Of a stretch of 64,000 nt of DNA, positions 28,973-58,411 are shown piece by piece. The position numbers were made by a program, and so were the translations under genes. The DNA lies in the sequence record MZ475891.1. One strand, 5' to 3'. Numbering within the stretch: position 1 is the first letter of the stretch; each line of letters begins with the position of its first letter. The notes under the pieces are model-generated. The model had not been told where the DNA came from. It did not search any database and saw only the letters and a program-made list of their open reading frames with translations.

Positions 28973-29464
28973 TTAGGCAAATCGCCCACCACGCCATGCG
29001 GCCTTGATGAGCAACTTAGCCACGATTTCGTTCTTCATTGTCTTTCGCTTTGCATTGCTACGGACAAATGCAGAGCCGAACTTATTCACGACAATCAAAC
29101 CAACACCGCTCACGCGTATGCGTTCGATTATTCTATCGCCGTGAGATTCAAACAGAGCCTCGTCTATGGCAAAGTACATACGCATACAAAACGGTAGATA
29201 CTTGTGCCACTTCTTATCGGTATTGAAATCAGCCCAGCAACTCTTAACCTCAGTGATAATCATATCGCATTTGGTATTAAGGCAGAACACATCTGCTCTT
29301 AGATTGCCGTGCTTAATCAAACCCAGCTCAACATGACAGGAATAACGTTTGTCAATCCAATAACGCTGAGCTGCCTCAGTGATAAACATAGTCCTATCAG
29401 GACGACTCATTGAGGCAAAGACTGCCTGTGTTTGACGTTCAGCTTTGCGGCGCTTAAAGGCCAT
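28973..29464 (-). CDS. mmcB: MmcB-family PD-(D/E)XK DNA-repair nuclease
   Basis: RADVFCL...IITEVKSCWADFNTDKKWHKYLPFCMRMYFA follows the MmcB pattern RAD...EIKSS..DF..D.KW..Y...CDR.YFA. Confidence 0.8.
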   Translation of the reverse strand: MAFKRRKAERQTQAVFASMSRPDRTMFITEAAQRYWIDKRYSCHVELGLIKHGNLRADVFCLNTKCDMIITEVKSCWADFNTDKKWHKYLPFCMRMYFAIDEALFESHGDRIIERIRVSGVGLIVVNKFGSAFVRSNAKRKTMKNEIVAKLLIKAAWRGGRFA

Positions 29465-29909
29465 ACGAGTCGATAATGTCCAGCGCCTGAGCTAAAATTG
29501 GGCGGAGTTTCTTGTCCACCTTCTTTAGAGCTTTATCAGCACTGAACCACTTACGCTCACGCATGCCTGCTTCATCGTATTCAGTCAGTTCCTGCTTGAC
29601 CTTCATGATGAACCATTCAACGTTCTGGGCGCGGCCGGTCTTGCCTTTAACATACTTCATAATGTCGATGAAGTCTTTAGGCTTACCAAGAATGCCGCCT
29701 TCTTCCATGGCTTCTTTAAGCGCGGAATCCAGTGGCGTCATACCTTTCTCAACGCCGCCTTTAGGGAATCCCCAATTGTTTCCGTGTGTGGTGCGAATCA
29801 ATAAGATCTGCACTTCACCTTTTTTCTTTTTGTATGGGACAACGCCTGACTGCTTACGCGCTTTCTTTTCAGAAGGCAGCTTAGCAGAGAGTGACACATT
29901 CAGCATCAT
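29454..29909 (-). CDS. Nudix hydrolase (diadenosine polyphosphate/DIPP-like subgroup)
   Basis: SGVVPY...LLI...WGFPKGGVEKGMTPLDSALKEAMEEGG Nudix box; ERKWF. Confidence 0.9.
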   Translation of the reverse strand: MMLNVSLSAKLPSEKKARKQSGVVPYKKKKGEVQILLIRTTHGNNWGFPKGGVEKGMTPLDSALKEAMEEGGILGKPKDFIDIMKYVKGKTGRAQNVEWFIMKVKQELTEYDEAGMRERKWFSADKALKKVDKKLRPILAQALDIIDSYGL

Positions 29910-30406
29910 AGATAATCACTTCCACGAGGCATGTTCACTTCCCAGCGCCCAGAGTTGTCTACCCACAGACCGTTATCTTGCAAACGCTTGTACGCATCAT
30001 ACAGAGAGCATGAGGCGAGCACTCGCAGTTCGGTGCCGAAGTCCGACATTGAATAGCTGTAGATAGATTCAGGCAGGTACGACAGGCGCTGGCCTTCATA
30101 CGAGTCGTGAACAATACAGCCATCAGCATCAGTAACAACAGCGTGAGATGCAACGAGGGTAGGCCCCAGAACAACGATACGATAGTCTGGGTGCTTGTTG
30201 TAGTTGCGCTGAATGAACAACGCAGCTTCTGCAAACGGACGTGCGACTTGCGCAGCGCGTGTGCAGTTTTGTTCAAACGCAGATTCAGACAAAGAGCGTG
30301 CACCAGTCAAATTCATGGCCGATGCAAAGATCATTGTTGTCAGATCGTTTGGTGCGATAGCTGTGGGGAAGAACTTCGTGCCCCACGCTTGATCTAAAGA
30401 AAGCAT
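29906..30406 (-). CDS. Hypothetical protein
   Basis: 166-aa ORF, AAGGAG RBS, 4-nt overlap with the Nudix gene. Confidence 0.7.
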   Translation of the reverse strand: MLSLDQAWGTKFFPTAIAPNDLTTMIFASAMNLTGARSLSESAFEQNCTRAAQVARPFAEAALFIQRNYNKHPDYRIVVLGPTLVASHAVVTDADGCIVHDSYEGQRLSYLPESIYSYSMSDFGTELRVLASCSLYDAYKRLQDNGLWVDNSGRWEVNMPRGSDYL

Positions 30407-30436
30407 GGACCGTCTCCTTATTCGATAGTCTAAACT

Positions 30437-30444
30437 AAATTAGC
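30437..30444 (-). promoter_or_regulatory. Candidate late-promoter motif GCTAATTT
   Basis: Exact motif 30 nt upstream of the 30406 start, in a 39-nt intergenic gap. Confidence 0.55.
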
Positions 30445-30445
30445 G

Positions 30446-40617: not shown

Positions 40618-41295
40618 TCAGTCCTCTACAATAATAAGCACAGGTCTAACAGCATCATCGAACTTGATGAACGCAGCGCCAACAAGATAGCCACCCTTCT
40701 CTACTTGTTTCACGACAGCCTTTTCAAGATCTGTTTCCCACTTATCGCGCTGTGCGGGTTTGTAAGAAGCAAACGTCTCAGAAGCATCGTAGTAGTTATA
40801 GGTACCACCAGTAGGCATTGGGATACGTGCAAGGAACTCTAAGCGACTACAGTTCTTGAACGGGGTCTTGCGTAGCTCTTGCGTCAGCTTGGTGTTCTCT
40901 GATTTAGAGCCAGGCACAGCGGTGAATACTTTCTTAGGCTGAGGCTCACGAGGAGCAGCAGGCATCTTCTCACGCGCTGGCGTATTCTTGTCGCTGGCTT
41001 TCTTAACACGAATACCAGAAACAGTCCCTGTGAATGGACGACTGCGACCAAGCAACGAACGTGCGGCCGTAGCATCAACAACAAACACAACAGACGGGTC
41101 ATCACGGTGCAGCACATAGAACTTGTTACGTGCAGCGGCCTTGATACCGAATACGTCTTTGTCCTCAATATCCGCTTCGTGTTCTTTGTTCTCGATACTG
41201 ACCTTGCGCTTACCTTCAAAGCGATACCAGTCGCAGTCATTGATAGACACGATAGGTGTTTTGCGTGAAGCACTCTCGCTCAGAAAAATAAGCAT
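40618..41295 (-). CDS. Putative internal virion protein (N-terminal SESAS + shared ~60-aa domain)
   Basis: MLIFLSESAS...WYRFEG...IEDKDVFGI...FYVL...PSVVFVVD...LLGRSRPF. Confidence 0.7.
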   Translation of the reverse strand: MLIFLSESASRKTPIVSINDCDWYRFEGKRKVSIENKEHEADIEDKDVFGIKAAARNKFYVLHRDDPSVVFVVDATAARSLLGRSRPFTGTVSGIRVKKASDKNTPAREKMPAAPREPQPKKVFTAVPGSKSENTKLTQELRKTPFKNCSRLEFLARIPMPTGGTYNYYDASETFASYKPAQRDKWETDLEKAVVKQVEKGGYLVGAAFIKFDDAVRPVLIIVED

Positions 41296-43608: not shown

Positions 43609-43953
43609 TCAGTAGCAAATCACATTAACACGCTGATCAACGTCACTTACCAGAACACTTTTATCCATAGAGCCAGTAAGAGTAAACTGACCTTCGATAA
43701 TCATCTGGCCACCAGCGAATTGCAGAATAATAGGCTCGGCAGTATCGATATACAACAGGCCTACGATAGCAGGCAGTTGATATCCAGTAGGTCCTACGAT
43801 AACAGACTGCATCTGATACAATCCATCGAGAGGTACGCCCACAGCATGAGACTGACGCTTGAGCACTTCGTTCTGATTAGAAGTAACTGAACGCACACGG
43901 CTGTCAACGACTAGCGTACGGTCGAGCTTACGATACTTTTGGCGCGTATACAT
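43609..43953 (-). CDS. Hypothetical virion protein
   Basis: 114-aa ORF, TAATG-coupled to the upstream gene. Confidence 0.65.
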   Translation of the reverse strand: MYTRQKYRKLDRTLVVDSRVRSVTSNQNEVLKRQSHAVGVPLDGLYQMQSVIVGPTGYQLPAIVGLLYIDTAEPIILQFAGGQMIIEGQFTLTGSMDKSVLVSDVDQRVNVICY

Positions 43954-44689: not shown

Positions 44690-45094
44690 CTAGTCGAGAC
44701 GCAAGCGAATCAGCGAGCTAGACTCAGAATCAACAACGGTAACGTCATCTTCATCGTCCAGGTCTTCTTCGTCTTCAACATCATCCGCAGAATCATCTTC
44801 GGAGGTATTGAGACTAACTACTTCATCGTCATACAACGACTCGGCTCTTTCTTCCTCGGCAGTAAGCGCTAAGGCCGCAGACAGAGCAGTAACCGAATCA
44901 GCCATGCTTGACGCACTACTCACGGAGTTAACGAGGCAGTTAGCTTCGAAGTTATCAGTGAGTTCGCATTCAAGGAACTGATCAGCATCTGGCGCAACAG
45001 CAGCTTGAGTTAACAAGCGTGCTACGTCCAACCACTGTCCGTCACGCGCGGCGACAATTGCCAGTGCAGCTAAGGAACCAGATAAGGTCTTCAT
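44690..45094 (-). CDS. Small acidic head protein
   Basis: 134 aa, helical N-half, D/E-rich C-half with DSESSS; directly after the MCP. Confidence 0.7.
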   Translation of the reverse strand: MKTLSGSLAALAIVAARDGQWLDVARLLTQAAVAPDADQFLECELTDNFEANCLVNSVSSASSMADSVTALSAALALTAEEERAESLYDDEVVSLNTSEDDSADDVEDEEDLDDEDDVTVVDSESSSLIRLRLD

Positions 45095-46313: not shown

Positions 46314-47036
46314 TTAGGCGCCGTAAGAGGAAGACATTTCGATGATCAGGTAACCTTTATCAGAGGTCGGCGAGTGCTTGATGATGCAGCCAGTCAGCTC
46401 AGTACCGGTACCGCCGATAGTCAGCATACCGTTCGGGCCCAGGGTAGGATGCAGCACATTGTCAGCAGACCAGTCAACAGACGGGTCGAACATTGACGTT
46501 GCGATGTTACCCAGCTTGATATAGCCGATACGGCCAACAACGTTTGATGCCAGACCACCGATAGGAGCATCAGCAGTGTAAGAACGCGCTTCGGTAACGG
46601 TCAGCTCGTATGCGTACTGAACGTATACGGTTTTGCCAACGTCATCAGCGTGGAAGTACAGGTCAGCGCCATCAACGCCAACGATACCTTTAGCAGACGC
46701 TTCGGTATCAGCTTCCTGGTCAGCTTTTTTGCCGTCGATTTTAACGAACAGCTTACCAGCATCAGGTACGCGAGAAGCAGTGAACTTTTTGGTAGCGTCG
46801 ATAGTGAAGGTTTCAACGCGGTTCATGTGCGCAGGCGGCATGTTACGAGCCAGAGCGAAACCAGCGAACACTTCGTTAGCAGCACCAGTAGACAGACGCA
46901 GGAATGATTGACCGTTTTCACGGGCCCATACCAGCGCAACGCCTTCTTCGTGGATTACTTCGCCCGGCAGCAGGTCAGCTTCCTGGGTCTGTACAATGTC
47001 AGTAGCATTCTGATACAACATAATTGGAATCTCCAA
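46314..47036 (-). CDS. Capsid decoration/cement protein
   Basis: 240 aa immediately upstream of the MCP; EEGVALV...FAGFA...G.I pattern typical of decoration proteins. Confidence 0.6.
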   Translation of the reverse strand: MEIPIMLYQNATDIVQTQEADLLPGEVIHEEGVALVWARENGQSFLRLSTGAANEVFAGFALARNMPPAHMNRVETFTIDATKKFTASRVPDAGKLFVKIDGKKADQEADTEASAKGIVGVDGADLYFHADDVGKTVYVQYAYELTVTEARSYTADAPIGGLASNVVGRIGYIKLGNIATSMFDPSVDWSADNVLHPTLGPNGMLTIGGTGTELTGCIIKHSPTSDKGYLIIEMSSSYGA

Positions 47037-47071: not shown

Positions 47072-49168
47072 TTATGAGCAGCGCAAACGGGCCAGTTTAT
47101 CTTCGAACGAGTCAGTGGAAGCTGAACTCTGTGATTGAATAGGTGCACTATCTTCGTCACCCAGAAGCTGCGCTGCAACGCTTGGTTGCTGCGGCTTAAC
47201 AGGTGCGGTGACCTGCTGTTGAACTACAGGCTGAGCCTGCTGCACGGTACCGGCTGCGGCTTCGATTGACTGTGCAACTTCGTTCTGTGCAGTTTCAGAC
47301 ATAGACATAAGAGTCTGTGCTTTTGCCAGAGAAGTTGTCAGGAAATCTTTACCATGCGCGATAAACGCGTTTTGAATCAGCGCGTTCGGGTCTTTGATGC
47401 CTGCGGCAGACAGAGAGCGAACGAGAGAATCAACGATCGGGTTACGCACTTCACCCCAGTAGTTTTTGGTGATACCCAGCTGAGCAGAAGACAGGGCAGC
47501 AATCAAACGTTCCTGATGGGAAGCAACAGTGTCGTTGATGGTAGACGATACGCTGGTAGTGGCTTCGTTGATGCGAGCATCAGATTCAGCAACCAGCAAC
47601 TTGTCTACAGGCATTTCGATTTGATACGGCATAAAGCCATACGCTTCGACTGTACCTACAACACCGCTTTGAACCAGGCTGTGTGAAACGGCACGGATGA
47701 AATTATCAGTTGCGAAAGATTTACGCGCAACTTCTTCACCAACAACGTTAGACACAGAGTTGAACGTGGCGCGAGCAACTGGCTGGCCGTCGTAGTACAT
47801 GTGTACCGATTCGACTTTACCGCCGTTAGAACGGCTGAGGCTTACCAGGGTCGGGTCCAGTTCGCCGTACTGAGCTTGTACGGTAGACAGGCTGTCGAAG
47901 GTGCGATTAACGACTTTAGATTCAGAATCGAAGTCTTCATCGTCGAGGTCGAGATCATCTTCTTCCAGATCTTCGTCCTCGTCGAGGTCTTCGTCTTCAT
48001 CAGCGCCAGACTCAGAATCGAAATCTTCGTCTTCGTCTTCGCCTTCGAGGTCCAGATCGTCTTCATCCAGATCTTCGTCGTCGTCGTCGCCTGCACCAGA
48101 TTCGGAGTCGAAGTCTTCGTCATCTTCGAGGTCTTCCTCGTCTTCGTCGTCCAGATCATCTTCATCCAGATCTTCGTTGTCGAGGTCATCCTCTTCGTCT
48201 GCCTCTTCGTCTTCCTCTTCGTCTTCGTCGAAGTCATCTTCATCGAAGTCGTCTTCATCTTCATCACCATCAGATGATTCAGAATCAAAGTCGTCGTCAG
48301 AATCTTCGTCTTCGTCGTCGAGGTCCAGATCGTCTTCGTCCAGGATATCAATGTCGCTGTCGCTATCATCGTCACCGGAGTTAGATTCAATCGGCTCGTC
48401 GACCAGCGCCGCAGAGCAATGCGCACAGAAGACAGGCTCTTCATCGGAGCTTACAGTAAACGGCTGTTCGCATTTAGCGGAGCAGCTATAGATGTGAGCT
48501 TCGACGGTACCGTCAGCGGCAGCAGAAGACAGAGCAGTAACAGCTTCAGGGGCTTCCTGAGCGTCACAGCTATCAACAGCCTGGCCGGTGTACGGGTCGA
48601 ATTTGGCAACAGTAGCAGCGTTGAAGCTACCAGTGTTGGACAGCGCTGTGAACGTTTGAGCACCAGACAGGGCCTGCGCGAAGTTGCGTTGAGCTTCTTC
48701 GGCAGTCTCGCCAGTAGCGATCAGGCTCGCGTGTTCAATCTGTTCATCAGCGTTTGCGCTCTCAGCAAGGAACTGTGATACGCGTTCATCAGTGATTTCT
48801 GACAGGTCAGCAGAGCACGACGGGCAGCAGCCCTGAACGAGCGAAGCACTGTCGCTGATAACGTGGCTACCACAACCATCCAGACAGATAGTGTAATGCG
48901 CCTTCACGTCACCAGCAGAAGACTGAGACTGAACTTCGGCTTTCTCAACCAAATCAGGATGCTCATCCAGCAGTTCGTTACCGCCGGTTGGGTTGTAGAG
49001 GTCAGCGCCACTTTGCGAAGCAAAGCCCACACCGTCAGAAGAACCATAAATCATTAAGTTCTGGCCTAACGCAGTGCGACGAAAGTTCTCTACTGCCTGA
49101 TTATGGTTTTTACCGACACACAGGATACCCGCGAGTTGGGTAATCTTTGGCATGGTTAAAACCCTCAT
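47072..49168 (-). CDS. Putative prohead core/scaffold protein with Zn-ribbon motifs and long acidic tract
   Basis: CLDGC/CPSC and CSAKC/CAHC pairs; ~150-residue D/E tract (~47925-48375) with four FDSES; position between protease and capsid genes. Confidence 0.6.
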   Translation of the reverse strand: MRVLTMPKITQLAGILCVGKNHNQAVENFRRTALGQNLMIYGSSDGVGFASQSGADLYNPTGGNELLDEHPDLVEKAEVQSQSSAGDVKAHYTICLDGCGSHVISDSASLVQGCCPSCSADLSEITDERVSQFLAESANADEQIEHASLIATGETAEEAQRNFAQALSGAQTFTALSNTGSFNAATVAKFDPYTGQAVDSCDAQEAPEAVTALSSAAADGTVEAHIYSCSAKCEQPFTVSSDEEPVFCAHCSAALVDEPIESNSGDDDSDSDIDILDEDDLDLDDEDEDSDDDFDSESSDGDEDEDDFDEDDFDEDEEEDEEADEEDDLDNEDLDEDDLDDEDEEDLEDDEDFDSESGAGDDDDEDLDEDDLDLEGEDEDEDFDSESGADEDEDLDEDEDLEEDDLDLDDEDFDSESKVVNRTFDSLSTVQAQYGELDPTLVSLSRSNGGKVESVHMYYDGQPVARATFNSVSNVVGEEVARKSFATDNFIRAVSHSLVQSGVVGTVEAYGFMPYQIEMPVDKLLVAESDARINEATTSVSSTINDTVASHQERLIAALSSAQLGITKNYWGEVRNPIVDSLVRSLSAAGIKDPNALIQNAFIAHGKDFLTTSLAKAQTLMSMSETAQNEVAQSIEAAAGTVQQAQPVVQQQVTAPVKPQQPSVAAQLLGDEDSAPIQSQSSASTDSFEDKLARLRCS

Positions 49169-49231: not shown

Positions 49232-50362
49232 TTAGACTTTTCTGCTATCAATATCTGACTGAGGAATATAGCGATTTTCGAAGTATTTATTCACTACTTC
49301 GACACCGTTTAGCGTATAAACGTTACGCAAACTATCTCCCCATACCATTAGTTCTGCCAGCGTTGCAAAGTGCTCCGTAGGCACGGATTTAATGGTCAGT
49401 GCATTGTTCGAATCAGGATGGATTCGCTTACCACGAATGGCCTGATCAAACTTCATACGGTCTACGTTACGCAGCATAGTATGGTCCACAAAGTGAGCCA
49501 ATTCATGCGTCATAACGTGGGCCATACTTTTGCTGTTATATCCACCCAGCAGACGAACAAGCTGTTGTGGACTAATAGCGATAACACCGTACATAAAGCC
49601 ACGAATCATGTACGTGCTAATGTGAGAACCGCCTACATCGTTACCTTCTTGCCCGCCCAGAATAGAAACGTACAGACGCTTAAACGGCAGATTAACGTTC
49701 AGCCCAACAGCAGGCATTACGTTGTCCTGGATATCCTTTAGCACGAATGCTGGTGGACTAACACCGTTGACTGAGATGTTTAGGCCAGGGATATTCAGTT
49801 CATCTGCACCACGCACTTCGAGATGTACCGTACCACATTTAGGTAGTGGTTGAATTGCGTAGTTGTTTGGAGTACCACCAGCATAAGCAATATCAGAGTA
49901 TTGCAGAGGCGTAAATTTACCGAACTGAGGCCTGTCAAGTTCTCGACGTTGACGCGCTTCTTTGGATGCACGATCATCATCGATAGGAGTATCAACAGGA
50001 GGTTTTGGCTCGGGTTCAGGCGGTGGGATTGGCACTTCGGCAGCGGCAGGTTTTGGAACTTTCGCAGGCTTAGGCACTTTGACAGGCTTAGGCTTAGCAG
50101 ACTTCTCCTCGAGTGGAGTAAAGTCAAAGCTATCAAACAACGCATCAGGCTGAGCAGCAAAAGGTCTGCTATTAGCCAGTATCATTCCAGCGCTCTCCCC
50201 GCTGATTGCAACAGCTTGAGGGTACTTAGGGTGAGCGATGTAATAGAGGTCATCGTTAACTTGATGGAGACCTACGACCTCGCGTGGCTGCATACGCACA
50301 CCATTTGAAATCATAGTATCTCCACCTAAGTAACGGACGAATTTGTAGTCCGTTATATCCAT
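49232..50362 (-). CDS. Zinc metallopeptidase (HExxH) with N-terminal shared domain and Pro-rich linker; start revised to MDITDY
   Basis: VMTHELAHFVDH (~49493-49507) and downstream EHFATLAE; ATG at 50362 overlaps the TAA of the protease gene. Confidence 0.75.
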   Translation of the reverse strand: MDITDYKFVRYLGGDTMISNGVRMQPREVVGLHQVNDDLYYIAHPKYPQAVAISGESAGMILANSRPFAAQPDALFDSFDFTPLEEKSAKPKPVKVPKPAKVPKPAAAEVPIPPPEPEPKPPVDTPIDDDRASKEARQRRELDRPQFGKFTPLQYSDIAYAGGTPNNYAIQPLPKCGTVHLEVRGADELNIPGLNISVNGVSPPAFVLKDIQDNVMPAVGLNVNLPFKRLYVSILGGQEGNDVGGSHISTYMIRGFMYGVIAISPQQLVRLLGGYNSKSMAHVMTHELAHFVDHTMLRNVDRMKFDQAIRGKRIHPDSNNALTIKSVPTEHFATLAELMVWGDSLRNVYTLNGVEVVNKYFENRYIPQSDIDSRKV

Positions 50363-51141
50363 TAACGCATCCGCAGCAGGTGTTCTTTGTACGTTGCAGC
50401 ACAAGCAAACGCTGGGTCATCCACAGAGCTACACTCGAAACCAGTGAGGCCCTTACAGTCACGATAAACCAGGCGGCCTGTACGTGCATCCAAATACGTA
50501 GGCTTGTTGAACGCTGTGTGCGAGCAGAAGTTACGATTCTTCGGTGTTACCATCTGACCACAGATACTGCATTTATAAGCACGGTAGGTTGTGCCCTTGC
50601 TGTACGTGTTCAGTTCACCGCTGAGAATACGATCACAACGTTCCTTACAGCGCGTGCGGTCAAACGCCAGCAACAGAGTCAGACGCGCATGATTGCCACG
50701 GAAGTTTTTCAGCTTAGACAGGTTTGAGTCAAAGATCATGCCCATTGCTTGGCGATAGTCTTTGTTGTTGTGCTCGATAAACGTCGGCTTACCAATGAAC
50801 GTCTGATATGCAAGGCGTCCTTGATCAGGGTTAAACGTCAACCATTCCTGCAAGCTGAATGCATCACCGTTAGTGTTCGGCAGCTCCGTGATGTTTACCA
50901 CAACAGGCGCAATGATATAGTCACGGATATCACGCGAGGTGTTGTACATCTCAGCAGCTTTAGGCAGCCACACGTTAACGTCGAGGTTAAAAGATCCCGT
51001 CTCAATACCGAAACGCGAAGCATCAACACGAATAGACTTAGCGTTTCGGCTAACATCTTCTTTGTGCATATCAATCGCGTTCAGTCCGACGAGGCCCATG
51101 TCTGAGGTATCAAACGACTCAGACTTGATGAGCTGGGTCAT
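50362..51141 (-). CDS. Prohead maturation protease (HK97/herpes-type serine protease) with Zn-binding insert
   Basis: FIGKPTFIEHN (His), NTYSKG (Ser), CSICG...CSH insert, GFECSSVDDPAF. Confidence 0.75.
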   Translation of the reverse strand: MTQLIKSESFDTSDMGLVGLNAIDMHKEDVSRNAKSIRVDASRFGIETGSFNLDVNVWLPKAAEMYNTSRDIRDYIIAPVVVNITELPNTNGDAFSLQEWLTFNPDQGRLAYQTFIGKPTFIEHNNKDYRQAMGMIFDSNLSKLKNFRGNHARLTLLLAFDRTRCKERCDRILSGELNTYSKGTTYRAYKCSICGQMVTPKNRNFCSHTAFNKPTYLDARTGRLVYRDCKGLTGFECSSVDDPAFACAATYKEHLLRMR

Positions 51142-51151: not shown

Positions 51152-51589
51152 CTATTGGAAATTGTTTATGTTATCAAGGCCGCAATTGGCTAGACGCACA
51201 TGCGACTCAGGCACCTCGAAGATTTGAGAGCAACCCAAGTCGGTCAGTTGATATATCAATCGTCCATTAGAAATTATTGCGTTTTCAACATAGGCAGCAA
51301 CTTCTGTACCATCTTCTTGCTTGACCATAACTTCAACGCCAGGATAGAATACGTCGAAACTCTTGGAGCTAAAGATAGGTCGAACAATGTCGGTCTCTGC
51401 AACAGGGTGCTGGGCATAGCGCGTTTGAATCATATACAACGCACAGTCACCGCTGATCAGGATAGTATTGATTGTGCCACGCAGATTGTACGGAGCACCC
51501 TGAGCAGTAGTGCCAGCAACGAACGTGACAATATCACCGATGTTATACGCAAACGAGAACTGAGCCATGTTAACCTCGAAGTGCACCAC
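51152..51589 (-). CDS. Hypothetical protein with two KOW/SH3-like units
   Basis: YNIGDIVTF...G.I..I.I and FYPGVEVMV...V....I; 145 aa. Confidence 0.6.
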   Translation of the reverse strand: MVHFEVNMAQFSFAYNIGDIVTFVAGTTAQGAPYNLRGTINTILISGDCALYMIQTRYAQHPVAETDIVRPIFSSKSFDVFYPGVEVMVKQEDGTEVAAYVENAIISNGRLIYQLTDLGCSQIFEVPESHVRLANCGLDNINNFQ

Positions 51590-52424
51590 GCGCCCAAGAC
51601 TTAGCGAGAGCCAGAGTCATGCGGCTAGGGTTCTGGAGTTTGACTTCACCCCGATGAACAGCAGTGAACGGTTCATTAGGGTTCTCGCTGCGCCCAGAAC
51701 GATACGCAGATTCATTGAAGCCATCAAACAAAGTAACCAGCCAGCCAGTTGACTTATCAGAGCATTCGCCGCACTTGTTATCCCAGCTAATCTTACCACA
51801 TGTACGGCCACCAGCATTGATGGCGTATGACACACGGTCTTTGTCAGAGTAAACGTCCTTGGCACGAATGGTCTTGAACGTCACACGAGACGAGGACTCG
51901 GAGCGCGGCATCATGCGTGCTTTAATCGCTTCTGCATCAATCGAGGACCAGAACGATTCAAACAGCATACCCAGCTTCTGATCGATAGGCAGCTTGAGTC
52001 CATTGATTTGGGCAATGGTACTGGAGCTATCATTGATAACGCGATTCAGGAAGTAGCCACCAATGATTATCGGCAGCTGTGTTCCCTGTGTGCCTACAGT
52101 AATACCAGATTGCTTGCAGTAGATCTCAGACAGACCGATAGCAAGACGCGCAAGAACCTTGAACGTCTCTTTCTCTGTCGTGTTTGCGATTTCAGTATAC
52201 AGACGCGCTGCAATGTTCGGCACGACTGTACGCTTGGCAACGCTGGCAATATCTTCGGCTGTGATAGTCTGACCAAGTTTCTTCTTGGCCGCTAACGCAA
52301 AGGCGTTATACAGGCTGGCTTTGTTCTCCGACGTCAGGGCCTCGTTCAGCTTGCTGATCGTCGTCTCCGCGCTGCTTTTCAGACTCGGAGTTTGAACTGT
52401 TTTGAGTCTCGCAACTTTCGGCAT
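51570..52424 (-). CDS. Hypothetical protein (two domains separated by RSESSS)
   Basis: 284-aa ORF with AGGAG RBS. Confidence 0.7.
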   Translation of the reverse strand: MPKVARLKTVQTPSLKSSAETTISKLNEALTSENKASLYNAFALAAKKKLGQTITAEDIASVAKRTVVPNIAARLYTEIANTTEKETFKVLARLAIGLSEIYCKQSGITVGTQGTQLPIIIGGYFLNRVINDSSSTIAQINGLKLPIDQKLGMLFESFWSSIDAEAIKARMMPRSESSSRVTFKTIRAKDVYSDKDRVSYAINAGGRTCGKISWDNKCGECSDKSTGWLVTLFDGFNESAYRSGRSENPNEPFTAVHRGEVKLQNPSRMTLALAKSWARGALRG

Positions 52425-53538
52425 TGGAGTTTTTCTCCTGGTTGAGGGCTTGCTTCGCTAAAATCCCAAGCAGGCCAGAGGCTTTGATTTCTGTCTCAAC
52501 GTCAAGCCCACGATGCAGACTGAGTTGAGCTAAATAGTTCAATGCAGGTTCGACCATATTAAGATTACGACAACCCCAATAGGCGCATTCGTAACATAAG
52601 TCTAAATTAACAGAGGTCTGGTCAAACAAGAAACTTTTTGGATTCTGTTGCGCAACAGACAGTCCCTGGATAGCCATGCCCACAGAGTTGATCATATCGT
52701 CACGGCGATAGAAAATATCAGACAGCATCGCGTAGCATTCAATACGATCAGAGCGGGCTGCAATAGCACGATAGCAGCAGTTAACGGCTTCCTGAATAAA
52801 GCCCTGCTTGAACGTTGCTTTTGACAGTTCCAGATTAGCCACAGCAACATAGTCAGACCACGTTGCGAGTTTGGTGAGACGTGCCACTTCGGCGCGTGCA
52901 TCATCAAGCAGGTCAGCACGGTCATAGTAAGCAACCGAATAGCACAGTTCACGCGCATAATAGAACGAGCAGCGCTGGTCACGAGGCCAATCGCCCGCAT
53001 CACGCGCCAGCTCCATGAGATAACCACGAGGCTTAGTGTGATCTGGGAAATGGTCAGTAGCGAACTCAGCACGCACAGTATGCGGTGGGTTACCTTCACG
53101 AATACGCATCAACACTTCATGCGCACGGTAACGCCACGTATATGCTCGGCTCTTGTATGCTTTCATCTGGTCATACTGGCTATCTCCGTTACGCATCAGA
53201 ATCCAAACACCATCAGCCTGTTCAATGTCAGGCATCTGACGTAACTTCTCAACCCAATCTGGATCGTCGAAGCGTTCATCAATGTCCAGCCAAACGATTA
53301 AATCATCTTCATGGAATGGCGCAGCGGCCAGGTCGCGACTAGCACCCAGATTGCGTTCTTCGGAGATGTCCGTAGAGTGATACAGCGCTGGGTGCGCGAA
53401 CTCGGAAACAATCTGAGTCGTTGCATCAATGCTGCCTGTGTCCACGATACTGATAGCATCAGCAGCAGACACATGCTTCAACCACTCGGCCATATTCTTT
53501 TCTTCATCACGGCAGATAGCCGCTACGCAAATTCTCAT
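52306..53538 (-). CDS. Glycosyltransferase family 2 with C-terminal TPR repeats
   Basis: ICVAAICRDEEKNMAEWL, IVDTGSIDAT, WLDIDERF (DxD), W.YRAHEVL, P.D.R..FYYARE, helical repeats. Confidence 0.88.
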   Translation of the reverse strand: MRICVAAICRDEEKNMAEWLKHVSAADAISIVDTGSIDATTQIVSEFAHPALYHSTDISEERNLGASRDLAAAPFHEDDLIVWLDIDERFDDPDWVEKLRQMPDIEQADGVWILMRNGDSQYDQMKAYKSRAYTWRYRAHEVLMRIREGNPPHTVRAEFATDHFPDHTKPRGYLMELARDAGDWPRDQRCSFYYARELCYSVAYYDRADLLDDARAEVARLTKLATWSDYVAVANLELSKATFKQGFIQEAVNCCYRAIAARSDRIECYAMLSDIFYRRDDMINSVGMAIQGLSVAQQNPKSFLFDQTSVNLDLCYECAYWGCRNLNMVEPALNYLAQLSLHRGLDVETEIKASGLLGILAKQALNQEKNSNAESCETQNSSNSESEKQRGDDDQQAERGPDVGEQSQPV

Positions 53539-53549: not shown

Positions 53550-54458
53550 TTATACAAGAACGTTACCGCTATCCCACCACTTCTTGCCATAGATTTCAGA
53601 CAGGCGGTAGTCAAGCACGATTTGTTGGTCAAGATCGACCTGAAGGATATCGCGACCTAGTGCAGCGCTATAAACTGTTTTCTCCTCAGTGTATACGCGT
53701 ATCTCTAGTTCCATGTCGCCTTGCGAATACTTGGGAACGAACGGCACATTCAGATCGCCGTTGAACCCCTGACCGAGCGTATCGTCAAAGTAAGTAGACA
53801 TACGAATCTCGGTGCCCTGATTGATAATGGTGGGTGCATACACCATGCGATTGTTATACGCCGTGTAGTCGGCCACCGTGGACTGTTGAATCAGGCGGCG
53901 CTTATAGATGCGCGTTACGCCTTTGTCATCCACTACCGTACGATACTGATTGTAGAACCAGTTGATCTCATAGAACTTAACTGGCTTGAGGCCAGCAGAT
54001 GAAACCAACGAGGCAGTCATACGGTGATAGGTCTTCTCCGTATTCAGACGATAGAGCAGAATCTTAAACGCGTACCATTGGTAAACGTCTAACGTGATTG
54101 AGCCTGCATCTGATTGCTGAGTACCGTTAGTGAGGATATACGAGAAGCAATCGCCACCAACGTAACCGCTACGGGGATCGTAAATGAACGCATCACTAAA
54201 GCTATTCAGTTCGACAGTACCCAACAGTGGGTCGCTCACTTTGATTGCAGCAAGGCGCCAACCACGCTGGGCTGGAACCTTGTCGAGAACGCCTTCTGTG
54301 GGACTGTGACCTGTTAGCTCGTCGCGTGCGCCTTGCAGAATCTGATCGATAGTGATTTCAGTTTTACCTGAGTTCTTCACACGTATCGTTCTGTTTGGTG
54401 CTATTGGCTTATAGTTACGCCAGTAGTCAAACGTACAAGGCAAAGAGAGCATAGTCAC
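53550..54458 (-). CDS. Virion protein with Ig-like (Big_9/cadherin-type) domain
   Basis: FIYDPRSGYVGGDCFSYILTNG...ITLDV matches the Y.P..GF.G.D.F.Y.V.DG pattern. Confidence 0.65.
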   Translation of the reverse strand: MTMLSLPCTFDYWRNYKPIAPNRTIRVKNSGKTEITIDQILQGARDELTGHSPTEGVLDKVPAQRGWRLAAIKVSDPLLGTVELNSFSDAFIYDPRSGYVGGDCFSYILTNGTQQSDAGSITLDVYQWYAFKILLYRLNTEKTYHRMTASLVSSAGLKPVKFYEINWFYNQYRTVVDDKGVTRIYKRRLIQQSTVADYTAYNNRMVYAPTIINQGTEIRMSTYFDDTLGQGFNGDLNVPFVPKYSQGDMELEIRVYTEEKTVYSAALGRDILQVDLDQQIVLDYRLSEIYGKKWWDSGNVLV

Positions 54459-56425
54459 TCCAACTTATATTTACGTCGGAACTCTGCTAGACCCATGACA
54501 GGAATGCCTTTGTCCATGGCCTTCTGGAGTTTCGCAGAACCCGAGCCTGGGTCTTTGGCGATAAGAATGGTTGTATCTGCCTTCATGCTATCTGAGGCAG
54601 TACCACCAAGCTCAACGATACGCTGCATCAGTTCACGATCACGAATGCCCGTGAATGCAACGTTAACGCCTTTCAGCTTAGAACTCTTCACCTGAACGCG
54701 CTTCGGTGCCACCAGCTTAACACCGATTTCATTCGCAAGCTGATACGCAGACACGCACGCAAGAGCAATGTCAGGTGATTTCGTTTTGATGCCATGAATA
54801 TCCGAGATAGCTTTAGCGAGCGCCAGAGGATTCTGTTTGCGCACTAGCTTGTCAAGGTCAGGCACGCTATCGACCACTTTATCAAACGTAGTGTTAGCGC
54901 CACGCATGAAGTACGGCGAGCACGCTTTAAGCCACGTATTGACAGCAACGCCTGAGCGTAATGCTTTGAGGTCTTTCGCAAGCTGAGCGCCACGCGAGTC
55001 ACCAACAACTTCACGCAGCACACCGATAGTTGCAGCGAACAAACGGGCAGGTGTATCAATGCCAGACTCTACGAGCAGCTTCGACGTACTCGGTCCTGTG
55101 TTAGCAACGTCCAATCCTTTGAGGAATGAACTGAGCAGTCGAGTAGTGCCTACCTCAGTCTTGGTATTGATAACGAACTCAACGCCATTGACTTTGTAAG
55201 GCACATCAGGCAGCTTTGGCTTCTTCGCAGGCTTGAGAATCTCCATGATGTATGGGATTACCTTACCGCTACGAATCAGCTTAACGGTAGCACCCGGGCC
55301 AAGAGGTTTCTTAGCGTGAGGTGCAGTCGCTTTGCCTTTAGGCTTGAGATAGCCGTGCTCAACATAGAATCCATTGTGACCATTAGCACGCTGCACAGTA
55401 ACACCGCCAGTCATCAACGTCGGTGGGAAGATGATAACAGGCTGCAAGATACCGTACTTGGTTTCTTGATAGATAACATCCTCTACCTTAACTATCACTG
55501 TGTCAGCTTCTGCATTCATCTTAAACTTGAATGCGTGCTTTGGATTGGATGCAGTCGCTTTAGGGCTGGGTACATCTTCCGTGAGTACAACACCATCCAG
55601 CTCGTAGATAGCTTTAGACAGACGGCGCTCCAAGAACGCGATCAACTCATCTTCTGAGTTGAAGCGCTTTGGTGGCGTATGCCTAACGACTTCGAATCCC
55701 CAGCGCTCTAGCAGGGCGAACTGCTTAGACTGTTTGAGCGTAGCACCATCACCGCCGATGATAGAAAAGCACACCATGCGGACGTACTTGAACTCGGACG
55801 CTGTTTCAAAGTTACGCACAAGTCCAGATGCAGCGTTACGCGCAGCCTTGAAGCGACCACCAGCAGACTCATGCATCTTAGCCATGAATGTCTTTTGAGG
55901 AATGAGTGCCTCAAAGCGCAACACCGTCTGACCTCTGACTGGAATCTTTTTAGGGATTTTCATCGCAGGGATATGATGGGATACGTCTTTACCATGAGTA
56001 GCATCACCACGGGTATAAGCCTTTACAGGCACCCCGTCTTGATACACAATCTCAAGGCTCAAGCCATCGAGCTTGTCTGTTGCAACGTAGTCCACATCTT
56101 TCGACAGTGCTTTGGCAATCTGCTTCGAGCCAGCCTGAAACTGATTGAGACTTGCCATAGGAACAGGCAGCTTAACATCGGCATCATCACGCTGGCCAAT
56201 CTTACGCGCCAGCTTAGACTTGGGCCATTTAGCGTCGATGTAGTTACGGATTGAATCGTACACCGCATCGCTCACCAGACCTTCATCATCCGTATGATAT
56301 GCGTTGTCCAGAGCGGTTATTAAGTTACGCACTTGCGTCTGGTTCAAGGTGTCCAAGACCTTTTGAGGGTTCTTGGACAGTTGCTTGAGACTAACAGAGG
56401 CAGAAATAGAAAGCCTTACTTTCAT
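54455..56425 (-). CDS. ligA: NAD+-dependent DNA ligase
   Basis: Domain Ia AYH...VSDAVYD, KLDG adenylation motif, TRGD..G.DV, R..A.G, YELDGVV, AFKF, OB fold, C-terminal BRCT (VAFTG...GG...K..KA...GIPV); no tetracysteine Zn finger evident. Confidence 0.93.
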   Translation of the reverse strand: MKVRLSISASVSLKQLSKNPQKVLDTLNQTQVRNLITALDNAYHTDDEGLVSDAVYDSIRNYIDAKWPKSKLARKIGQRDDADVKLPVPMASLNQFQAGSKQIAKALSKDVDYVATDKLDGLSLEIVYQDGVPVKAYTRGDATHGKDVSHHIPAMKIPKKIPVRGQTVLRFEALIPQKTFMAKMHESAGGRFKAARNAASGLVRNFETASEFKYVRMVCFSIIGGDGATLKQSKQFALLERWGFEVVRHTPPKRFNSEDELIAFLERRLSKAIYELDGVVLTEDVPSPKATASNPKHAFKFKMNAEADTVIVKVEDVIYQETKYGILQPVIIFPPTLMTGGVTVQRANGHNGFYVEHGYLKPKGKATAPHAKKPLGPGATVKLIRSGKVIPYIMEILKPAKKPKLPDVPYKVNGVEFVINTKTEVGTTRLLSSFLKGLDVANTGPSTSKLLVESGIDTPARLFAATIGVLREVVGDSRGAQLAKDLKALRSGVAVNTWLKACSPYFMRGANTTFDKVVDSVPDLDKLVRKQNPLALAKAISDIHGIKTKSPDIALACVSAYQLANEIGVKLVAPKRVQVKSSKLKGVNVAFTGIRDRELMQRIVELGGTASDSMKADTTILIAKDPGSGSAKLQKAMDKGIPVMGLAEFRRKYKLE

Positions 56426-56464
56426 GCTTTTCTCCGATCGACATTAACACTCTTGTTTACAGTG

Positions 56465-58411
56465 TTATGATGCGATAGGGTCCTTGTTGACCTCGTAATC
56501 TTCCGCCATGTCGTACACGCGATTGAACAGCTTAGGCGCCATATCTTTCACATGCTCGGCATAGTCAAACAGGTTCTGCTTACGCGCACGATTGACACGC
56601 ACCTGACGTACTTCGTCTGGGCTATTCGTAATGTCATACAGCGTATACACAACGATGTTATCGGATGAGTTATGAGTGCTTACTTTGAGGACTACCCAAT
56701 CGCGTTGCAGCTTAGCATCAGCCTTGAAGCGGAGGACGTCGCCCTCTTCGGCTTCATCTGCACGCGCATCAGGAGTAGACTTGTTAGTTGCGGCAATCTT
56801 CTTCGCAGTCTCGGCAGCTTCTTTCTCTGCCTCAGCCACATCAGAGTCTTGGTCTTCATCCGCTTCTGTTTCGTCTACGGCATCAGAGGTATCGTCAGCG
56901 GAGTCGTCGGCTTCTTCGTCGTCATCTCCAGACGTATCTTCCTCGTCATCTCCTCCGTCGTCGGCATCATCGGGATCCACATCGGAGTCGTCATCTGAAT
57001 CGTCGGAGCTATCATCCCCATCCTCATCATCAGACTCTGAATCGCTATCGTCAGCATCTTCTTCTGCATCTGGATCGTCCTTTTCCGTTTCGTCGTCTGG
57101 GTCAACGTCACCGCCTTCAGGGTCATCCTCTTCCAGCTCGGAGTCGTCGTCGAGGTTATCCTCTTCGGAGTCGTCTGGCTCATCATCCTTGGTTGAGTTC
57201 TTAGCAGAGCCACCTTTCTTGCGAACCTTAGACTTAGGAGCAACTTCCTCTTCGTCATCATCTGGCTCATCAATGTCAGACAGGTCAAGCTCGGAATCGA
57301 CTTCGTTGTCTGCGCTATCATCACCGCCGAACATAGAACTAACGGTGTCCTCCAGACTGAATACATCACCTGCAAACGGGCTACGTTGAAGAATGTCTTC
57401 AAGGCGTTGCTCATCGAGGTCCTGCTCAAGGTCCAGATGTTCTTCGATAGCATCATCGAGGTTTTCATGCTCAATGACTTTAGGCAGACGACGACGATCA
57501 TTCAGGCCAGGGTCATCGGAGTAGATGGTACGCTGTGGTCCTGTAGGCGCTTCAATCTCACCGTCACGCACTTTGCGTCTGAGGTCACGCATCTCTGCGC
57601 TACGCTCACGCGCTTTCTTACGTGCTTCCTGTGCGAGTTCCTTGCGCTGTTGTTTGCGCTCAAGGGCAGATGCCTCACGACCTAAACGTTCAGCTTCTTC
57701 CTGTTCACGGCCTTCGCGATGGCGAGCACGACGAACCATACGACGATACTGTTTGATAGTATCAACATCAACACTACCAACAGGCCAGTCATTAAGAGGC
57801 AGAATGTTTGTGTCATGCACAATCAGATCGTACTGAGCGTCATCAACTTTCAGGAACAGGCCTTCTGTGTTGATAACGATACCGCCTTTGCCTTGACGCA
57901 AGAAACGCACGCCAATCATATCGTTGCGGTACATCTTATAAATACCCTTGGTAGTCTTCACAGGATACTCATTGCCCGGCACCATGCGCCATTGATAGTT
58001 GGCAAAGTCAACGCCATACACAGCTTCTGACTTAACCGATTTCGGCATAAAGCGAGGAGCATCAAACAGGGTGCGATTGATTTTACGCTCAAGGCTCTTA
58101 GCACCAGCAACGCGTGCAGTAGTACCGGCCTCACGTTTAACCACAGCTGGTGGCTTACGCAACTTAGAGCTACGTTCAATGAGGAACAGACCTGTCGTTT
58201 TGTCGAGAGGGAAATCGACGTGCGGCATGTCTGGGAAAATCAGTGTATAACGACCACCATTCCTGAGTGGCAGAATACCAAAAGTGTCGCCATTACGAAT
58301 CATACGTTTGTGTGATCGCTGCGTCACCTCTCGCCCACGTGAACCAGTAAACTGCATCCACGCGTACTTCGATACGGCATCTTCATATGATGCGGATTCG
58401 GAGAGTACCAT
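56465..58411 (-). CDS. Putative internal virion protein: SESAS, two copies of the shared domain, charged coiled coil, long acidic tract, C-terminal SH3/KOW-like domain
   Basis: Read directly from the translation; acidic tract ~56830-57330. Confidence 0.7.
   Translation of the reverse strand: MVLSESASYEDAVSKYAWMQFTGSRGREVTQRSHKRMIRNGDTFGILPLRNGGRYTLIFPDMPHVDFPLDKTTGLFLIERSSKLRKPPAVVKREAGTTARVAGAKSLERKINRTLFDAPRFMPKSVKSEAVYGVDFANYQWRMVPGNEYPVKTTKGIYKMYRNDMIGVRFLRQGKGGIVINTEGLFLKVDDAQYDLIVHDTNILPLNDWPVGSVDVDTIKQYRRMVRRARHREGREQEEAERLGREASALERKQQRKELAQEARKKARERSAEMRDLRRKVRDGEIEAPTGPQRTIYSDDPGLNDRRRLPKVIEHENLDDAIEEHLDLEQDLDEQRLEDILQRSPFAGDVFSLEDTVSSMFGGDDSADNEVDSELDLSDIDEPDDDEEEVAPKSKVRKKGGSAKNSTKDDEPDDSEEDNLDDDSELEEDDPEGGDVDPDDETEKDDPDAEEDADDSDSESDDEDGDDSSDDSDDDSDVDPDDADDGGDDEEDTSGDDDEEADDSADDTSDAVDETEADEDQDSDVAEAEKEAAETAKKIAATNKSTPDARADEAEEGDVLRFKADAKLQRDWVVLKVSTHNSSDNIVVYTLYDITNSPDEVRQVRVNRARKQNLFDYAEHVKDMAPKLFNRVYDMAEDYEVNKDPIAS

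What the first reader, a model, noticed from the sequence alone, without database searches (positions are those of the whole stretch)
29454..58411. S-[E/Q/I/L]-S-[A/S/G] motif at N-termini and linkers: candidate maturation-protease site or packaging tag that also marks two enzymes
Seen near N-termini: MVL-SESAS (56465..58411), MLIFL-SESAS (40618..41295), MKVRL-SISAS (DNA ligase), MMLNV-SLSA (Nudix), MTQLIK-SES (prohead protease), LAL-SQST (MCP residue ~33). Seen internally: FD-SES four times plus SQSG/SQSSA in the scaffold candidate, A-SESA (26146..27909), R-SESS (51570..52424), D-SESS (44690..45094). Established: T4 gp21 and phiKZ gp175 cleave many head proteins at short motifs (I/L-x-E; S/A/G-x-E), and multiple sites in scaffolds allow their removal. 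Inference: the serine protease at 50362..51141 recognises an S-x-S motif, and the ligase and Nudix hydrolase are packaged and ejected with the DNA.
Basis: partly seen in the sequence, partly recalled or inferred. Interest (0 to 1): 0.72.

Follow-up and report, generated by a model that had tools for sequence, protein, structure and literature searches.

The report
Candidate Ser-x-Ser head-protease cleavage motif
A short Ser-x-Ser(-Ala) motif in this Erwinia jumbo phage is real, conserved and sits where a capsid-maturation protease would cut. It probably defines a new cleavage specificity and a readable tag for proteins packed into the phage head, but no cleavage has yet been measured.

Summary
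The window is Erwinia jumbo phage pEa_SNUABM_13. The enrichment is not chance.

Both serines are fixed across genera while the middle residue and flanks drift. This holds in:
- the capsid protein (two sites; the second is in a hypervariable linker, in 27/27 close relatives against about 1% of control windows);
- the portal (two sites);
- the protease's own N-terminus;
- the scaffold candidate (8 invariant pairs against 1.25 expected);
- about a dozen short N-terminal leaders.

The protease has the T4 gp21 fold. One tagged protein, a 1944-aa helicase, is a proven virion component in relative PaBG and keeps the tag there.

Best reading (about 0.6): [V/F/I/L]-x-S-x-S-[A/small] is the prohead protease site and doubles as a leader on packaged proteins.

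- the middle residue is free;
- two "SESAS" proteins are paralogs (KMPT-N domain);
- the four FDSES copies are tandem repeats;
- the ligase tag is patchy (two genera only).

Packaging of ligase and Nudix remains unproven. No proteomic cleavage data exist for this lineage.

The parts
50362..51141 (-). Prohead (capsid maturation) serine protease, 259 aa. It carries its own conserved S-x-S-F site at residues 7-10 (nt 51112-51126).
   Evidence: phrog_18299 head maturation protease, E 1e-125. AF2 model pLDDT 88. The only significant PDB fold match is T4 gp21 5JBL. H124, S181 and E236 are invariant in 61 homologs. The N-terminal S-x-S-F is kept in Y3, Yoloswag, Afa-NA1, JA11 and PaBG with x = E, E, H, E, K, R.
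47072..49168 (-). Scaffold candidate, 698 aa (databases call it 'ATPase'), with a long acidic repeat tract and many S-x-S sites: residues 51, 81, 105, 262, 296, 355, 385, 415, 426, 443, 471, 585, 679.
   Evidence: It lies between the protease and the MCP in all relatives out to phiRSL1. 30 Ser are invariant in 5 phages and form 8 S-x-S pairs against 1.25 expected, 0/5000. It is the most S-x-S-enriched real protein in the genome, 22 against 8.2, z 5.2. Lu11 has A-x-A, S-x-A or A-x-G in the same columns. It has no Pfam or PDB match.
45150..46250 (-). Major capsid protein, 366 aa, HK97 fold, with an N-terminal extension of about 70 residues. Site 1 is at residues 33-35 (nt 46137-46157 spans L32-E38). 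Site 2 is at residues 66-68 (nt 46041-46061 spans V64-A70).
   Evidence: phrog_2522. PDB 6WKK aligns from residue 106 to chain residue 34, and that MCP has no propeptide. Site 1: S33 and S35 are invariant in 27/27 relatives at >=65% identity, with x = E 11, Q 9, A 4, S 3. Site 2 linker: S.S in 27/27, 9/12 and 22/55 by identity band, against 1-6% of control windows. The PaBG clade has [A/S]-x-S-A-R there. PaBG MCP loses about 20% of its mass (PMC7412058).
56465..58411 (-). 648-aa protein with the N-terminal leader M-V-L-SESA-S (nt 58388-58405), followed by a KMPT-N domain and an acidic tract.
   Evidence: PF20294, E 3e-17. The tag is kept as SESA (Y3), SLSA (Yoloswag) and SQSA (JA11). Only 7 Ser are invariant in 648 residues, and two of them are the tag.
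40618..41295 (-). 225-aa KMPT-N protein between the two tail-tube paralogs, with leader MLIFL-SESA-S (nt 41266-41283). It is a paralog of 56465..58411.
   Evidence: PF20294, E 6e-19. blastp residues 3-85 against 1-81, E 1.7e-5. The tag is kept as SESA (Y3), SASA (Yoloswag) and SVSA (JA11).
49232..50362 (-). Third KMPT-N paralog (376 aa from the likely start), directly downstream of the protease. It has no N-terminal tag but has a conserved internal S-x-S at residue ~277.
   Evidence: PF20294, E 2.6e-20. SKS/SLS/SAS/SKS in four phages.
29454..29909 (-). Nudix hydrolase, 151 aa, with N-terminal V-SLSA-K (nt 29883-29897).
   Evidence: PF00293, E 2e-14. SLSA is kept in Y3, and in Yoloswag it directly follows the initiator Met.
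54455..56425 (-). NAD-dependent DNA ligase, 656 aa, with N-terminal L-SISA-S (nt 56396-56413) in a 6-8-residue insertion ahead of the conserved start of the protein.
   Evidence: Pfam adenylation, OB and BRCT domains. SISAS is also in JA11. It is absent in Y3, Yoloswag, Afa-NA1 and PaBG, where in-frame stops lie just upstream of the annotated starts.
51570..52223 (-). 217-aa head-module protein of unknown function with a conserved internal S-x-S (nt 51891-51911).
   Evidence: SES/SES/SLS/SES in four phages. phrog_31537, function unknown.
44690..45094 (-). 134-aa protein just downstream of the MCP, with a conserved S-x-S at residue 57 (nt 44915-44932) and a Ser-rich DSESS near the C-terminus.
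   Evidence: SVS/SFS/SVS/SVS in four phages. The C-terminal site is Ser-rich but not cleanly conserved.
43953..44624 (-). 223-aa protein between the MCP and the sheath, with N-proximal S-T-S at residues 12-14 (nt 44580-44597).
   Evidence: STS in four phages and SGS in Afa-NA1.
26146..27909 (-). 587-aa protein of unknown function with A-SESA-A at residues 131-136 (nt 27502-27522).
   Evidence: Yoloswag's ortholog has SMSA at the same place. phrog_32352, function unknown.
46314..47021 (-). 235-aa 'virion structural protein' directly upstream of the MCP (decoration-protein position). It has no conserved S-x-S and serves as an internal negative.
   Evidence: phrog_16710. 1 invariant Ser and 0 conserved S-x-S. 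Phage G has its decoration gene in the same position.
52306..53538 (-). GT2 glycosyltransferase conserved in the head module. It is relevant only to the rival 'modification sequon' reading.
   Evidence: Annotated in all relatives out to PaBG and Lu11.

Best explanation
The motif, best written [V/F/I/L]-x-Ser-x-Ser-[Ala/small], is the recognition site of the phage's own prohead serine protease (window 50362..51141, T4 gp21 fold).

Inferred mechanism:
- Inside the assembled prohead the protease trims its own N-terminus.
- It cuts the scaffold candidate at a dozen or so sites so that the fragments can leave.
- It removes about 68 N-terminal residues of the capsid protein (two sites) and about 50 of the portal (two sites).
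- It clips 3-16-residue leaders from a set of about 12-15 other proteins.

By analogy with other giant phages, those leaders would also mark their carriers as head-internal, packaged proteins. The carriers are the KMPT-N domain proteins, several proteins of unknown function, the 1944-aa SNF2-type helicase, the Nudix hydrolase and, in some genera, the ligase.

Shown: the motif's presence, its enrichment, its replication in unseen sequence, its positional conservation with a free middle residue, the protease fold, and virion residence of the helicase ortholog in PaBG.

Inferred: that the protease binds this motif, where exactly it cuts (most likely after the second Ser), and that the tagged enzymes are packaged.
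For: 1. Enrichment replicates outside the window under a local-composition null, and the controls are flat. The density of S-x-S-A is about 4 times higher in residues 1-15 than anywhere else.
2. The substrate set is the classical one for prohead proteases: two MCP sites, two portal sites, the protease N-terminus, the scaffold candidate with 8 invariant pairs against 1.25 expected, and head-module neighbours.
3. The site in the hypervariable MCP linker is present in 27/27 close relatives against about 1% of control windows. It sits where removal would cost about 19% of the mass, matching the ~20% loss reported for PaBG MCP.
4. A feature not used to pick the sites appears: V/F/I/L two residues before the first Ser in 20/24 sites, and Ala after the second Ser in 12/24.
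5. The protease has the T4 gp21 fold and invariant H124/S181/E236.
6. The tagged helicase is orthologous to PaBG gp202, virion band 1. PaBG's copy keeps S-L-S-A at residues 9-12 although its N-terminus is otherwise unalignable.
7. The architecture parallels SPN3US gp245, which has a P3-x-P1 motif, a P4 hydrophobic and P1' small preference, some leaders of only 20-24 residues, and autoprocessing (PMC10052503).
Against: - No mass-spectrometric or Edman N-terminus exists for any member of this lineage in the literature I could reach, so cleavage at the motif is unobserved.
- Characterised relatives of this protease fold cut after Glu. A Ser at that position would be a change of specificity that I cannot test from sequence.
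- At MCP site 1 the deeper-conserved element is the T-G-E-x-N-A that follows the motif, so the cut there could lie after that Glu.
- The motif decays in the Lu11, phiRSL1 and PaBG-like clades to small-x-small.
- Some tagged proteins are replication or repair enzymes with no virion evidence.
- A few conserved S-x-S pairs also occur in tail proteins.
Confidence: 0.6

Rival explanations
1. The motif is a docking or targeting signal that brings proteins to the scaffold, portal or a chaperone, but it is not itself the scissile site. The protease cuts elsewhere, for example after a conserved acidic residue as in characterised relatives.
For: At MCP site 1 the T-G-E-x-N-A that follows the motif is conserved far deeper than the serines: G 55/55 and E 49/55 below 50% identity. 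Known proteases of this fold cut after Glu (PMC10052503).
Against: No Glu or other fixed residue recurs at a constant offset from the 24 conserved sites. The multiple sites inside the scaffold candidate, and the single conserved element in the hypervariable MCP linker at the position predicted from the PaBG mass loss, fit cutting better than docking.
Confidence: 0.15
2. S-x-S is a sequon for a post-translational modification, for instance O-glycosylation by the GT2 glycosyltransferase (52306..53538) that is conserved inside the head module.
For: A glycosyltransferase gene is kept between the ligase and the protease in every relative out to PaBG and Lu11. The fixed residues are hydroxyl-bearing serines.
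Against: The motif clusters in the first 15 residues of many unrelated proteins and in proteins that normally leave the head (scaffold, protease). In the Lu11, NCTB and PaBG clades one or both serines are replaced by Ala or Gly at the same columns, which cannot be glycosylated. PaBG MCP loses mass on maturation and does not gain it.
Confidence: 0.08
3. The leaders are removed by a host enzyme with a small-x-small preference (signal-peptidase-like), or reflect export, and not by the phage protease.
For: The generalised pattern, small-x-small followed by Ala, resembles the -3/-1 rule for leader peptidases (my own knowledge, not tested here).
Against: The leaders are 3-16 residues long with at most 3-5 hydrophobic residues and no basic n-region or long h-region. 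The carriers include the cytoplasmic capsid, portal, helicase and Nudix proteins, and many sites are internal (scaffold, MCP linker).
Confidence: 0.04
4. The pattern is chance plus Ser-rich composition plus paralogy.
For: The motif was defined post hoc. Two N-terminal examples are paralogs. The FDSES copies are tandem repeats. N-termini are slightly Ser-rich, 8.4% against 6.8%.
Against: The enrichment replicates in unseen sequence under a local-composition null with flat controls. The sites are positionally conserved across genera with a variable middle residue. An independent hydrophobic preference appears at position -2.
Confidence: 0.03

Closest known systems
SPN3US prohead protease gp245 and its substrates (also phiKZ and 201phi2-1, as cited in PMC10052503)
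   Same: A giant-phage prohead protease with a three-residue P3-x-P1 motif, a hydrophobic preference just upstream and a small residue just downstream. Substrates are the MCP, the portal, the protease itself and abundant internal or ejection proteins. Some N-terminal propeptides are only 20-24 residues. Long propeptides are cut at several sites.
   Different: gp245 cuts after Glu (A-X-E), whereas here both fixed positions are Ser and no Glu is fixed. There is no detectable sequence similarity between the proteases. Leaders here are often only 3-16 residues. Nothing here has been measured.
T4 capsid assembly protease gp21 (PDB 5JBL) and T4 head maturation
   Same: The same fold: it is the only significant PDB match, with probability 1.0 and target-normalised TM 0.58-0.64. 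There is a His...Ser pair about 57 residues apart, and the gene sits beside the scaffold and capsid genes. The SPN3US paper notes that T4 propeptides target proteins into the prohead core.
   Different: About 11% identity and no Pfam family hit. There is an extra Cys/His cluster (C191, C194, C206, H208). The putative specificity differs.
PaBG / Lu11 / Y3 'Lupandier' jumbo phages and phiRSL1 (Mieseafarmvirus)
   Same: The same lineage and head-module order. PaBG virions show a processed MCP (about 20% smaller), several multiply processed proteins, and the giant helicase as a virion protein (PMC7412058).
   Different: No cleavage sites were mapped there. In these more distant members the motif relaxes to [S/A]-x-[S/A/G].

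Membership tests
Prohead serine proteases of the T4 gp21 / HK97 gp4 / assemblin-like fold | Fold similarity to a solved member | tested here: met
   AF2 model pLDDT 88, pTM 0.85. Foldseek against the PDB gives 5JBL chains A-C as the only significant hits, probability 1.00, TMt 0.58-0.64. BFVD returns many 'prohead serine protease' models and phage G gp19.
Prohead serine proteases of the T4 gp21 / HK97 gp4 / assemblin-like fold | Invariant catalytic His and Ser (plus a third acidic or His residue) | tested here: met
   H124, S181 and E236 (also S69, N89, S238) are invariant in 61 homologs down to about 30% identity. Their spatial arrangement in the model was not inspected.
Prohead serine proteases of the T4 gp21 / HK97 gp4 / assemblin-like fold | Match to a curated sequence family (Pfam peptidase S77/S78/S80 models) | tested here: not met
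   No Pfam hit for the protein or for any of 8 orthologs. No PDB hit by sequence or by profile. Only phrog_18299 matches. It is a distinct sequence family with the same fold.
Prohead serine proteases of the T4 gp21 / HK97 gp4 / assemblin-like fold | Gene next to the scaffold and major capsid genes | tested here: met
   The order protease - (KMPT-N) - scaffold candidate - small virion protein - MCP is kept out to phiRSL1.
Prohead serine proteases of the T4 gp21 / HK97 gp4 / assemblin-like fold | Demonstrated proteolysis of head proteins | not testable with these tools
   There is only indirect literature evidence: PaBG virion proteins are processed.
Giant-phage prohead-protease cleavage-motif systems (SPN3US gp245 type) | The motif recurs in the MCP, the portal, the protease itself and internal head proteins, with multiple sites in removable regions | tested here: met
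Giant-phage prohead-protease cleavage-motif systems (SPN3US gp245 type) | Glu at P1 (cut C-terminal to x-x-Glu) | tested here: not met
   No Glu is fixed at any offset in 24 conserved sites. The fixed residues are two Ser.
Giant-phage prohead-protease cleavage-motif systems (SPN3US gp245 type) | Cleavage termini observed in virions | not testable with these tools
   No proteomic termini were found for this lineage.
N-terminal capsid-targeting leaders on packaged proteins | A short N-terminal leader ending in the protease motif | tested here: met
   12 annotated proteins have S-x-S-A within the first 15 residues, conserved in Yoloswag, JA11 and PaBG.
N-terminal capsid-targeting leaders on packaged proteins | Carriers are found inside virions | tested here: inconclusive
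   Only the helicase ortholog is documented in virions (PaBG gp202). That proteome listed just 14 Coomassie bands. There are no data for Nudix, ligase or the KMPT-N proteins.
KMPT-N domain proteins (Pfam PF20294) | Score above Pfam's gathering threshold | tested here: met
   72.8, 62.9 and 68.4 bits against a cut-off of 28.9 for 49232.., 56465.. and 40618...
Sec-type signal peptides cut by leader peptidase | A basic n-region and a hydrophobic h-region of about 10 or more residues before a small-x-small site | tested here: not met
   The leaders are 3-16 residues with at most about 5 hydrophobic residues.

The most novel reading that the evidence does not exclude
The Ser-x-Ser-Ala leader is a general, genome-readable packaging-and-cleavage tag. 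If so, this phage lineage loads its head with a DNA-transaction toolkit: a 1944-aa SNF2-type helicase, a Nudix hydrolase, in some genera an NAD-ligase, plus KMPT-N proteins. These would be injected with the genome. The protease would have switched its P1 preference from Glu to Ser, a specificity not described for this fold in phages.
Probability: 0.25. Interest if true: 0.75.

Novelty: new variant of a known kind. Interest (0 to 1): 0.55.

Why it matters
If the motif is the cleavage site, three things follow:
- It defines a new specificity for a widespread prohead-protease family (more than 1100 relatives in the metagenomic library) that no curated model currently covers.
- It lets mature termini of capsid, portal and scaffold proteins be predicted for a whole jumbo-phage lineage used in fire-blight biocontrol research.
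- It gives a sequence-only way to list candidate packaged or ejected proteins, including DNA enzymes. That question is otherwise answered only by deep virion proteomics.

It also shows that the "ATPase" annotation of the gene between protease and capsid is probably wrong.

Tried and rejected
- **DNA-level explanation (shared promoter or RNA element under the N-termini).** Rejected because the copies use different Ser, Glu and Ala codons.
- **Mis-called starts as the reason Y3 and Yoloswag ligases lack the tag.** Rejected because in-frame stops lie just upstream.
- **Phage G MCP (PDB 6WKK) as an experimental cleavage anchor.** Its gene is 282 aa against a 280-aa chain, so it has no propeptide.
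- **Sequence and profile searches of the protease against the PDB and Pfam.** Nothing was found; only the fold search worked.
- **Literature searches for termini or virion proteomes** of Y3, SNUABM phages, Lu11, phiRSL1, fHe-Yen9-02 and phage G. There are no cleavage data, and three papers are not held.
- **Strict all-orthologs-invariant counting.** It undercounted sites where MAFFT slipped by one column, so I added an alignment-free linker test.
- **PaBG gp191 (processed virion protein).** It has no motif in its first 80 residues.

Full report
**Identity and context.** The window is positions ~62001-126000 of Erwinia amylovora jumbo phage pEa_SNUABM_13 (MZ475891.1, 264.7 kb), with 100% identity over the 20 kb tested. 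All of its genes lie on the minus strand. Annotated relatives are pEa_SNUABM_7 (98%), vB_EamM_Y3 (~76%), Yoloswag, Dickeya JA11, Alcaligenes Afa-NA1, and more distantly PaBG, Lu11 and phiRSL1. The finding's span holds baseplate/tail genes, a head module and several enzymes. The head module runs protease 50362..51141, a KMPT-N protein, a 698-aa acidic protein 47072..49168, a 235-aa virion protein, and the MCP 45150..46250.

- That statistic is post hoc, so I fetched the remaining ~200 kb of the genome as separate loci and used it as an independent set. There it occurs 28 times against 15.8 overall and 6 against 1.2 at N-termini.
- N-termini are slightly Ser-rich, so I repeated the test shuffling only residues 2-20 of each protein. 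S-x-S-A in the first 15 residues occurs 14 times against 3.0 genome-wide and 10 against 2.5 outside the window (0 of 500 shuffles). Six control patterns are flat.
- Two of the ten hits outside the window lie in short unannotated ORFs, and eight lie in annotated genes.
- The density of S-x-S-A is 2.6 per 1000 residues in positions 1-15 against about 0.6 elsewhere.
- The copies use different codons, so the signal is in the peptide and not in the DNA.

**Corrections to the observation.**
- The two SESAS proteins (56465..58411 and 40618..41295), together with 49232..50362, share an N-terminal Pfam KMPT-N domain. Their leaders lie within a BLAST-alignable paralogous stretch.
- The four FDSES copies are tandem repeats in an acidic tract.
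- The second position is not limited to E/Q/I/L.

**Conservation.** Across genera the two serines stay fixed while the middle residue and the flanks change.

| Protein | Observed pattern across relatives |
|---|---|
| Protease N-terminus | S-x-S-F with x = E, E, H, E, K, R, out to PaBG |
| KMPT-N leaders | SESA / SLSA / SQSA, and SESA / SASA / SVSA |
| Nudix | SLSA in Y3; directly after the Met in Yoloswag |
| Tagged proteins outside the window | helicase STSA / STSK; a 415-aa protein SESA / STSA; a 429-aa protein beside the head-tail connector SISA / SIST; a pair of 331/333-aa paralogs SESA / SLSA |
| Portal (record 5575-7500) | two sites in its variable first 60 residues, kept in JA11 and a Yersinia phage; NCTB has A-L-A at the second |

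**Scaffold candidate and MCP.**
- In 47072..49168, 30 Ser are invariant across five phages, and 16 of them form eight S-x-S pairs against 1.25 expected (0 of 5000 permutations). Other spacings are unremarkable. Two of the eight pairs sit in Cys motifs and are probably structural.
- It is the most S-x-S-enriched real protein in the genome (z 5.2).
- In 94 MCP cluster representatives, site 1 has S33 and S35 in 27/27 sequences at >=65% identity, with residue 34 split E 11, Q 9, A 4, S 3.
- Residues 62-78 form a hypervariable linker between a conserved N-terminal segment and the HK97 core. Even so, an S-x-S occurs within residues 60-80 in 27/27, 9/12 and 22/55 sequences by identity band. Control windows from the mature part of the same proteins contain one 1.2%, 3.1% and 5.6% of the time.
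- PaBG-like sequences have [A/S]-x-S-A-R there.
- The only solved relative, phage G gp27, aligns from our residue 106 to its residue 34 and has no propeptide (282-aa gene, 280-aa chain). Our first ~70 residues therefore lie outside the shared core.
- Cutting at site 2 removes 68 of 366 residues (19%). PaBG's MCP is reported to shrink by about 20% (PMC7412058).

**Motif shape.** Over 24 positionally conserved or N-terminal sites, V/F/I/L occupies the position two residues before the first Ser in 20 cases. Ala follows the second Ser in 12, and other small residues follow in most of the rest. No residue, Glu included, is fixed further downstream. The hydrophobic preference was not used to select the sites.

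**The protease.**
- There is no Pfam or PDB sequence match.
- A scan of 1.84 billion representatives gave 1162 relatives.
- In 61 of them, S69, N89, H124, G134, L157, S181, G183, E236 and S238 are invariant.
- The AlphaFold model (pLDDT 88) matches only T4 gp21 significantly in the PDB, and matches prohead serine proteases in the viral library.

**Virion evidence.** PaBG_00202 is 1969 aa and sits in the same helicase-lysozyme-Pol I neighbourhood. It is the ortholog of the tagged helicase and is band 1 of the PaBG virion proteome. Its N-terminus carries S-L-S-A at residues 9-12 although BLAST cannot align its first ~100 residues with ours. I found no termini or deeper virion proteomes for the lineage.

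**Ligase and Nudix.**
- The ligase tag lies in a short insertion ahead of the conserved start. It is present in Snuvirus and in JA11.
- It is absent in Y3, Yoloswag, Afa-NA1 and PaBG, where upstream in-frame stops exclude mis-annotated starts. It is therefore non-random but dispensable.
- The Nudix tag is conserved in three genera.
- Neither enzyme has virion evidence.

**Interpretation.** The distribution matches the pattern described for SPN3US gp245 (PMC10052503): MCP, portal, protease, a multiply-sited scaffold candidate, and short leaders on a set of other proteins, one of which is a known virion protein. The fixed residues here are Ser and not Ala/Glu.
- I rate 'prohead-protease site that also marks packaged proteins' at about 0.6.
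- The rivals are: a docking signal with the cut elsewhere (0.15; the T-G-E-x-N-A after MCP site 1 is conserved more deeply); a modification sequon for the conserved head-module glycosyltransferase (0.08); host leader-peptidase-type processing (0.04); and chance or paralogy (0.03).

Noticed in passing
Homologs of window 50362..51141 (e.g. P0002, P0010, P0023-P0025): Many protease relatives are about 610-870 aa and match the 259-aa query in two pieces, split just after query residue ~124 beside the invariant E123-H124. That leaves about 380 extra residues in between, which looks like an intein at the presumed catalytic His.
   Followed up: no
window 24830-26145: A ~1.3-kb stretch with no annotated gene here or in relatives. 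There is no tRNA or Rfam match, and one terminator-like hairpin on the minus strand (24903-24882). Only the ends are conserved beyond the genus. It is unexplained.
   Followed up: partly
window 56465-58411, 40618-41295, 49232-50362: Three paralogs carry the Pfam KMPT-N domain (PF20294). One sits beside the protease and one sits between the two tail-tube paralogs. The domain's role is unknown, and I found no paper describing it.
   Followed up: partly
window 47072-49168: The scaffold candidate is labelled 'ATPase' in PHROGs and RefSeq but has no ATPase domain hit. It carries conserved Cys motifs (around residues 115-119 and 226-230, plus a further Cys-x-His-Cys stretch) that suggest zinc ribbons, and a D/E repeat tract of about 150 residues.
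   Followed up: partly
window 50362-51141, residues 191-208: The protease has a conserved Cys/His cluster (C191, C194, C206, H208) that the aligned T4 gp21 fold does not account for. It may be a zinc-binding insert.
   Followed up: no
window 54455-56425 and relatives (L002-L008): The NAD-dependent DNA ligase gene sits inside the structural gene block, between tail and head genes, in every relative out to PaBG and Lu11. A GT2 glycosyltransferase (52306-53538) is likewise fixed in the head module.
   Followed up: no
L011:23492-29326 (record 148991-154825) and PaBG L020:1139-7048: A ~1950-aa SNF2-type helicase is a virion protein in PaBG and carries the N-terminal tag in pEa_SNUABM_13, Yoloswag and PaBG. 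A packaged giant helicase is unusual in itself.
   Followed up: partly
L009:5349-5567 (72-aa ORF just upstream of the portal): A small CxxC...CxxC protein conserved next to the portal in JA11 and fHe-Yen9-02. PHROGs labels it 'DNA ligase', which is probably a misnomer. It has an S-x-S at residue 17 in this phage only.
   Followed up: no
window 7145-7966, 13140-15709: Four tail-fibre-like paralogs share an N-terminal module (blastp E down to 2e-20). Several other proteins in the genome begin with a similar M-S-L-I-K start.
   Followed up: no
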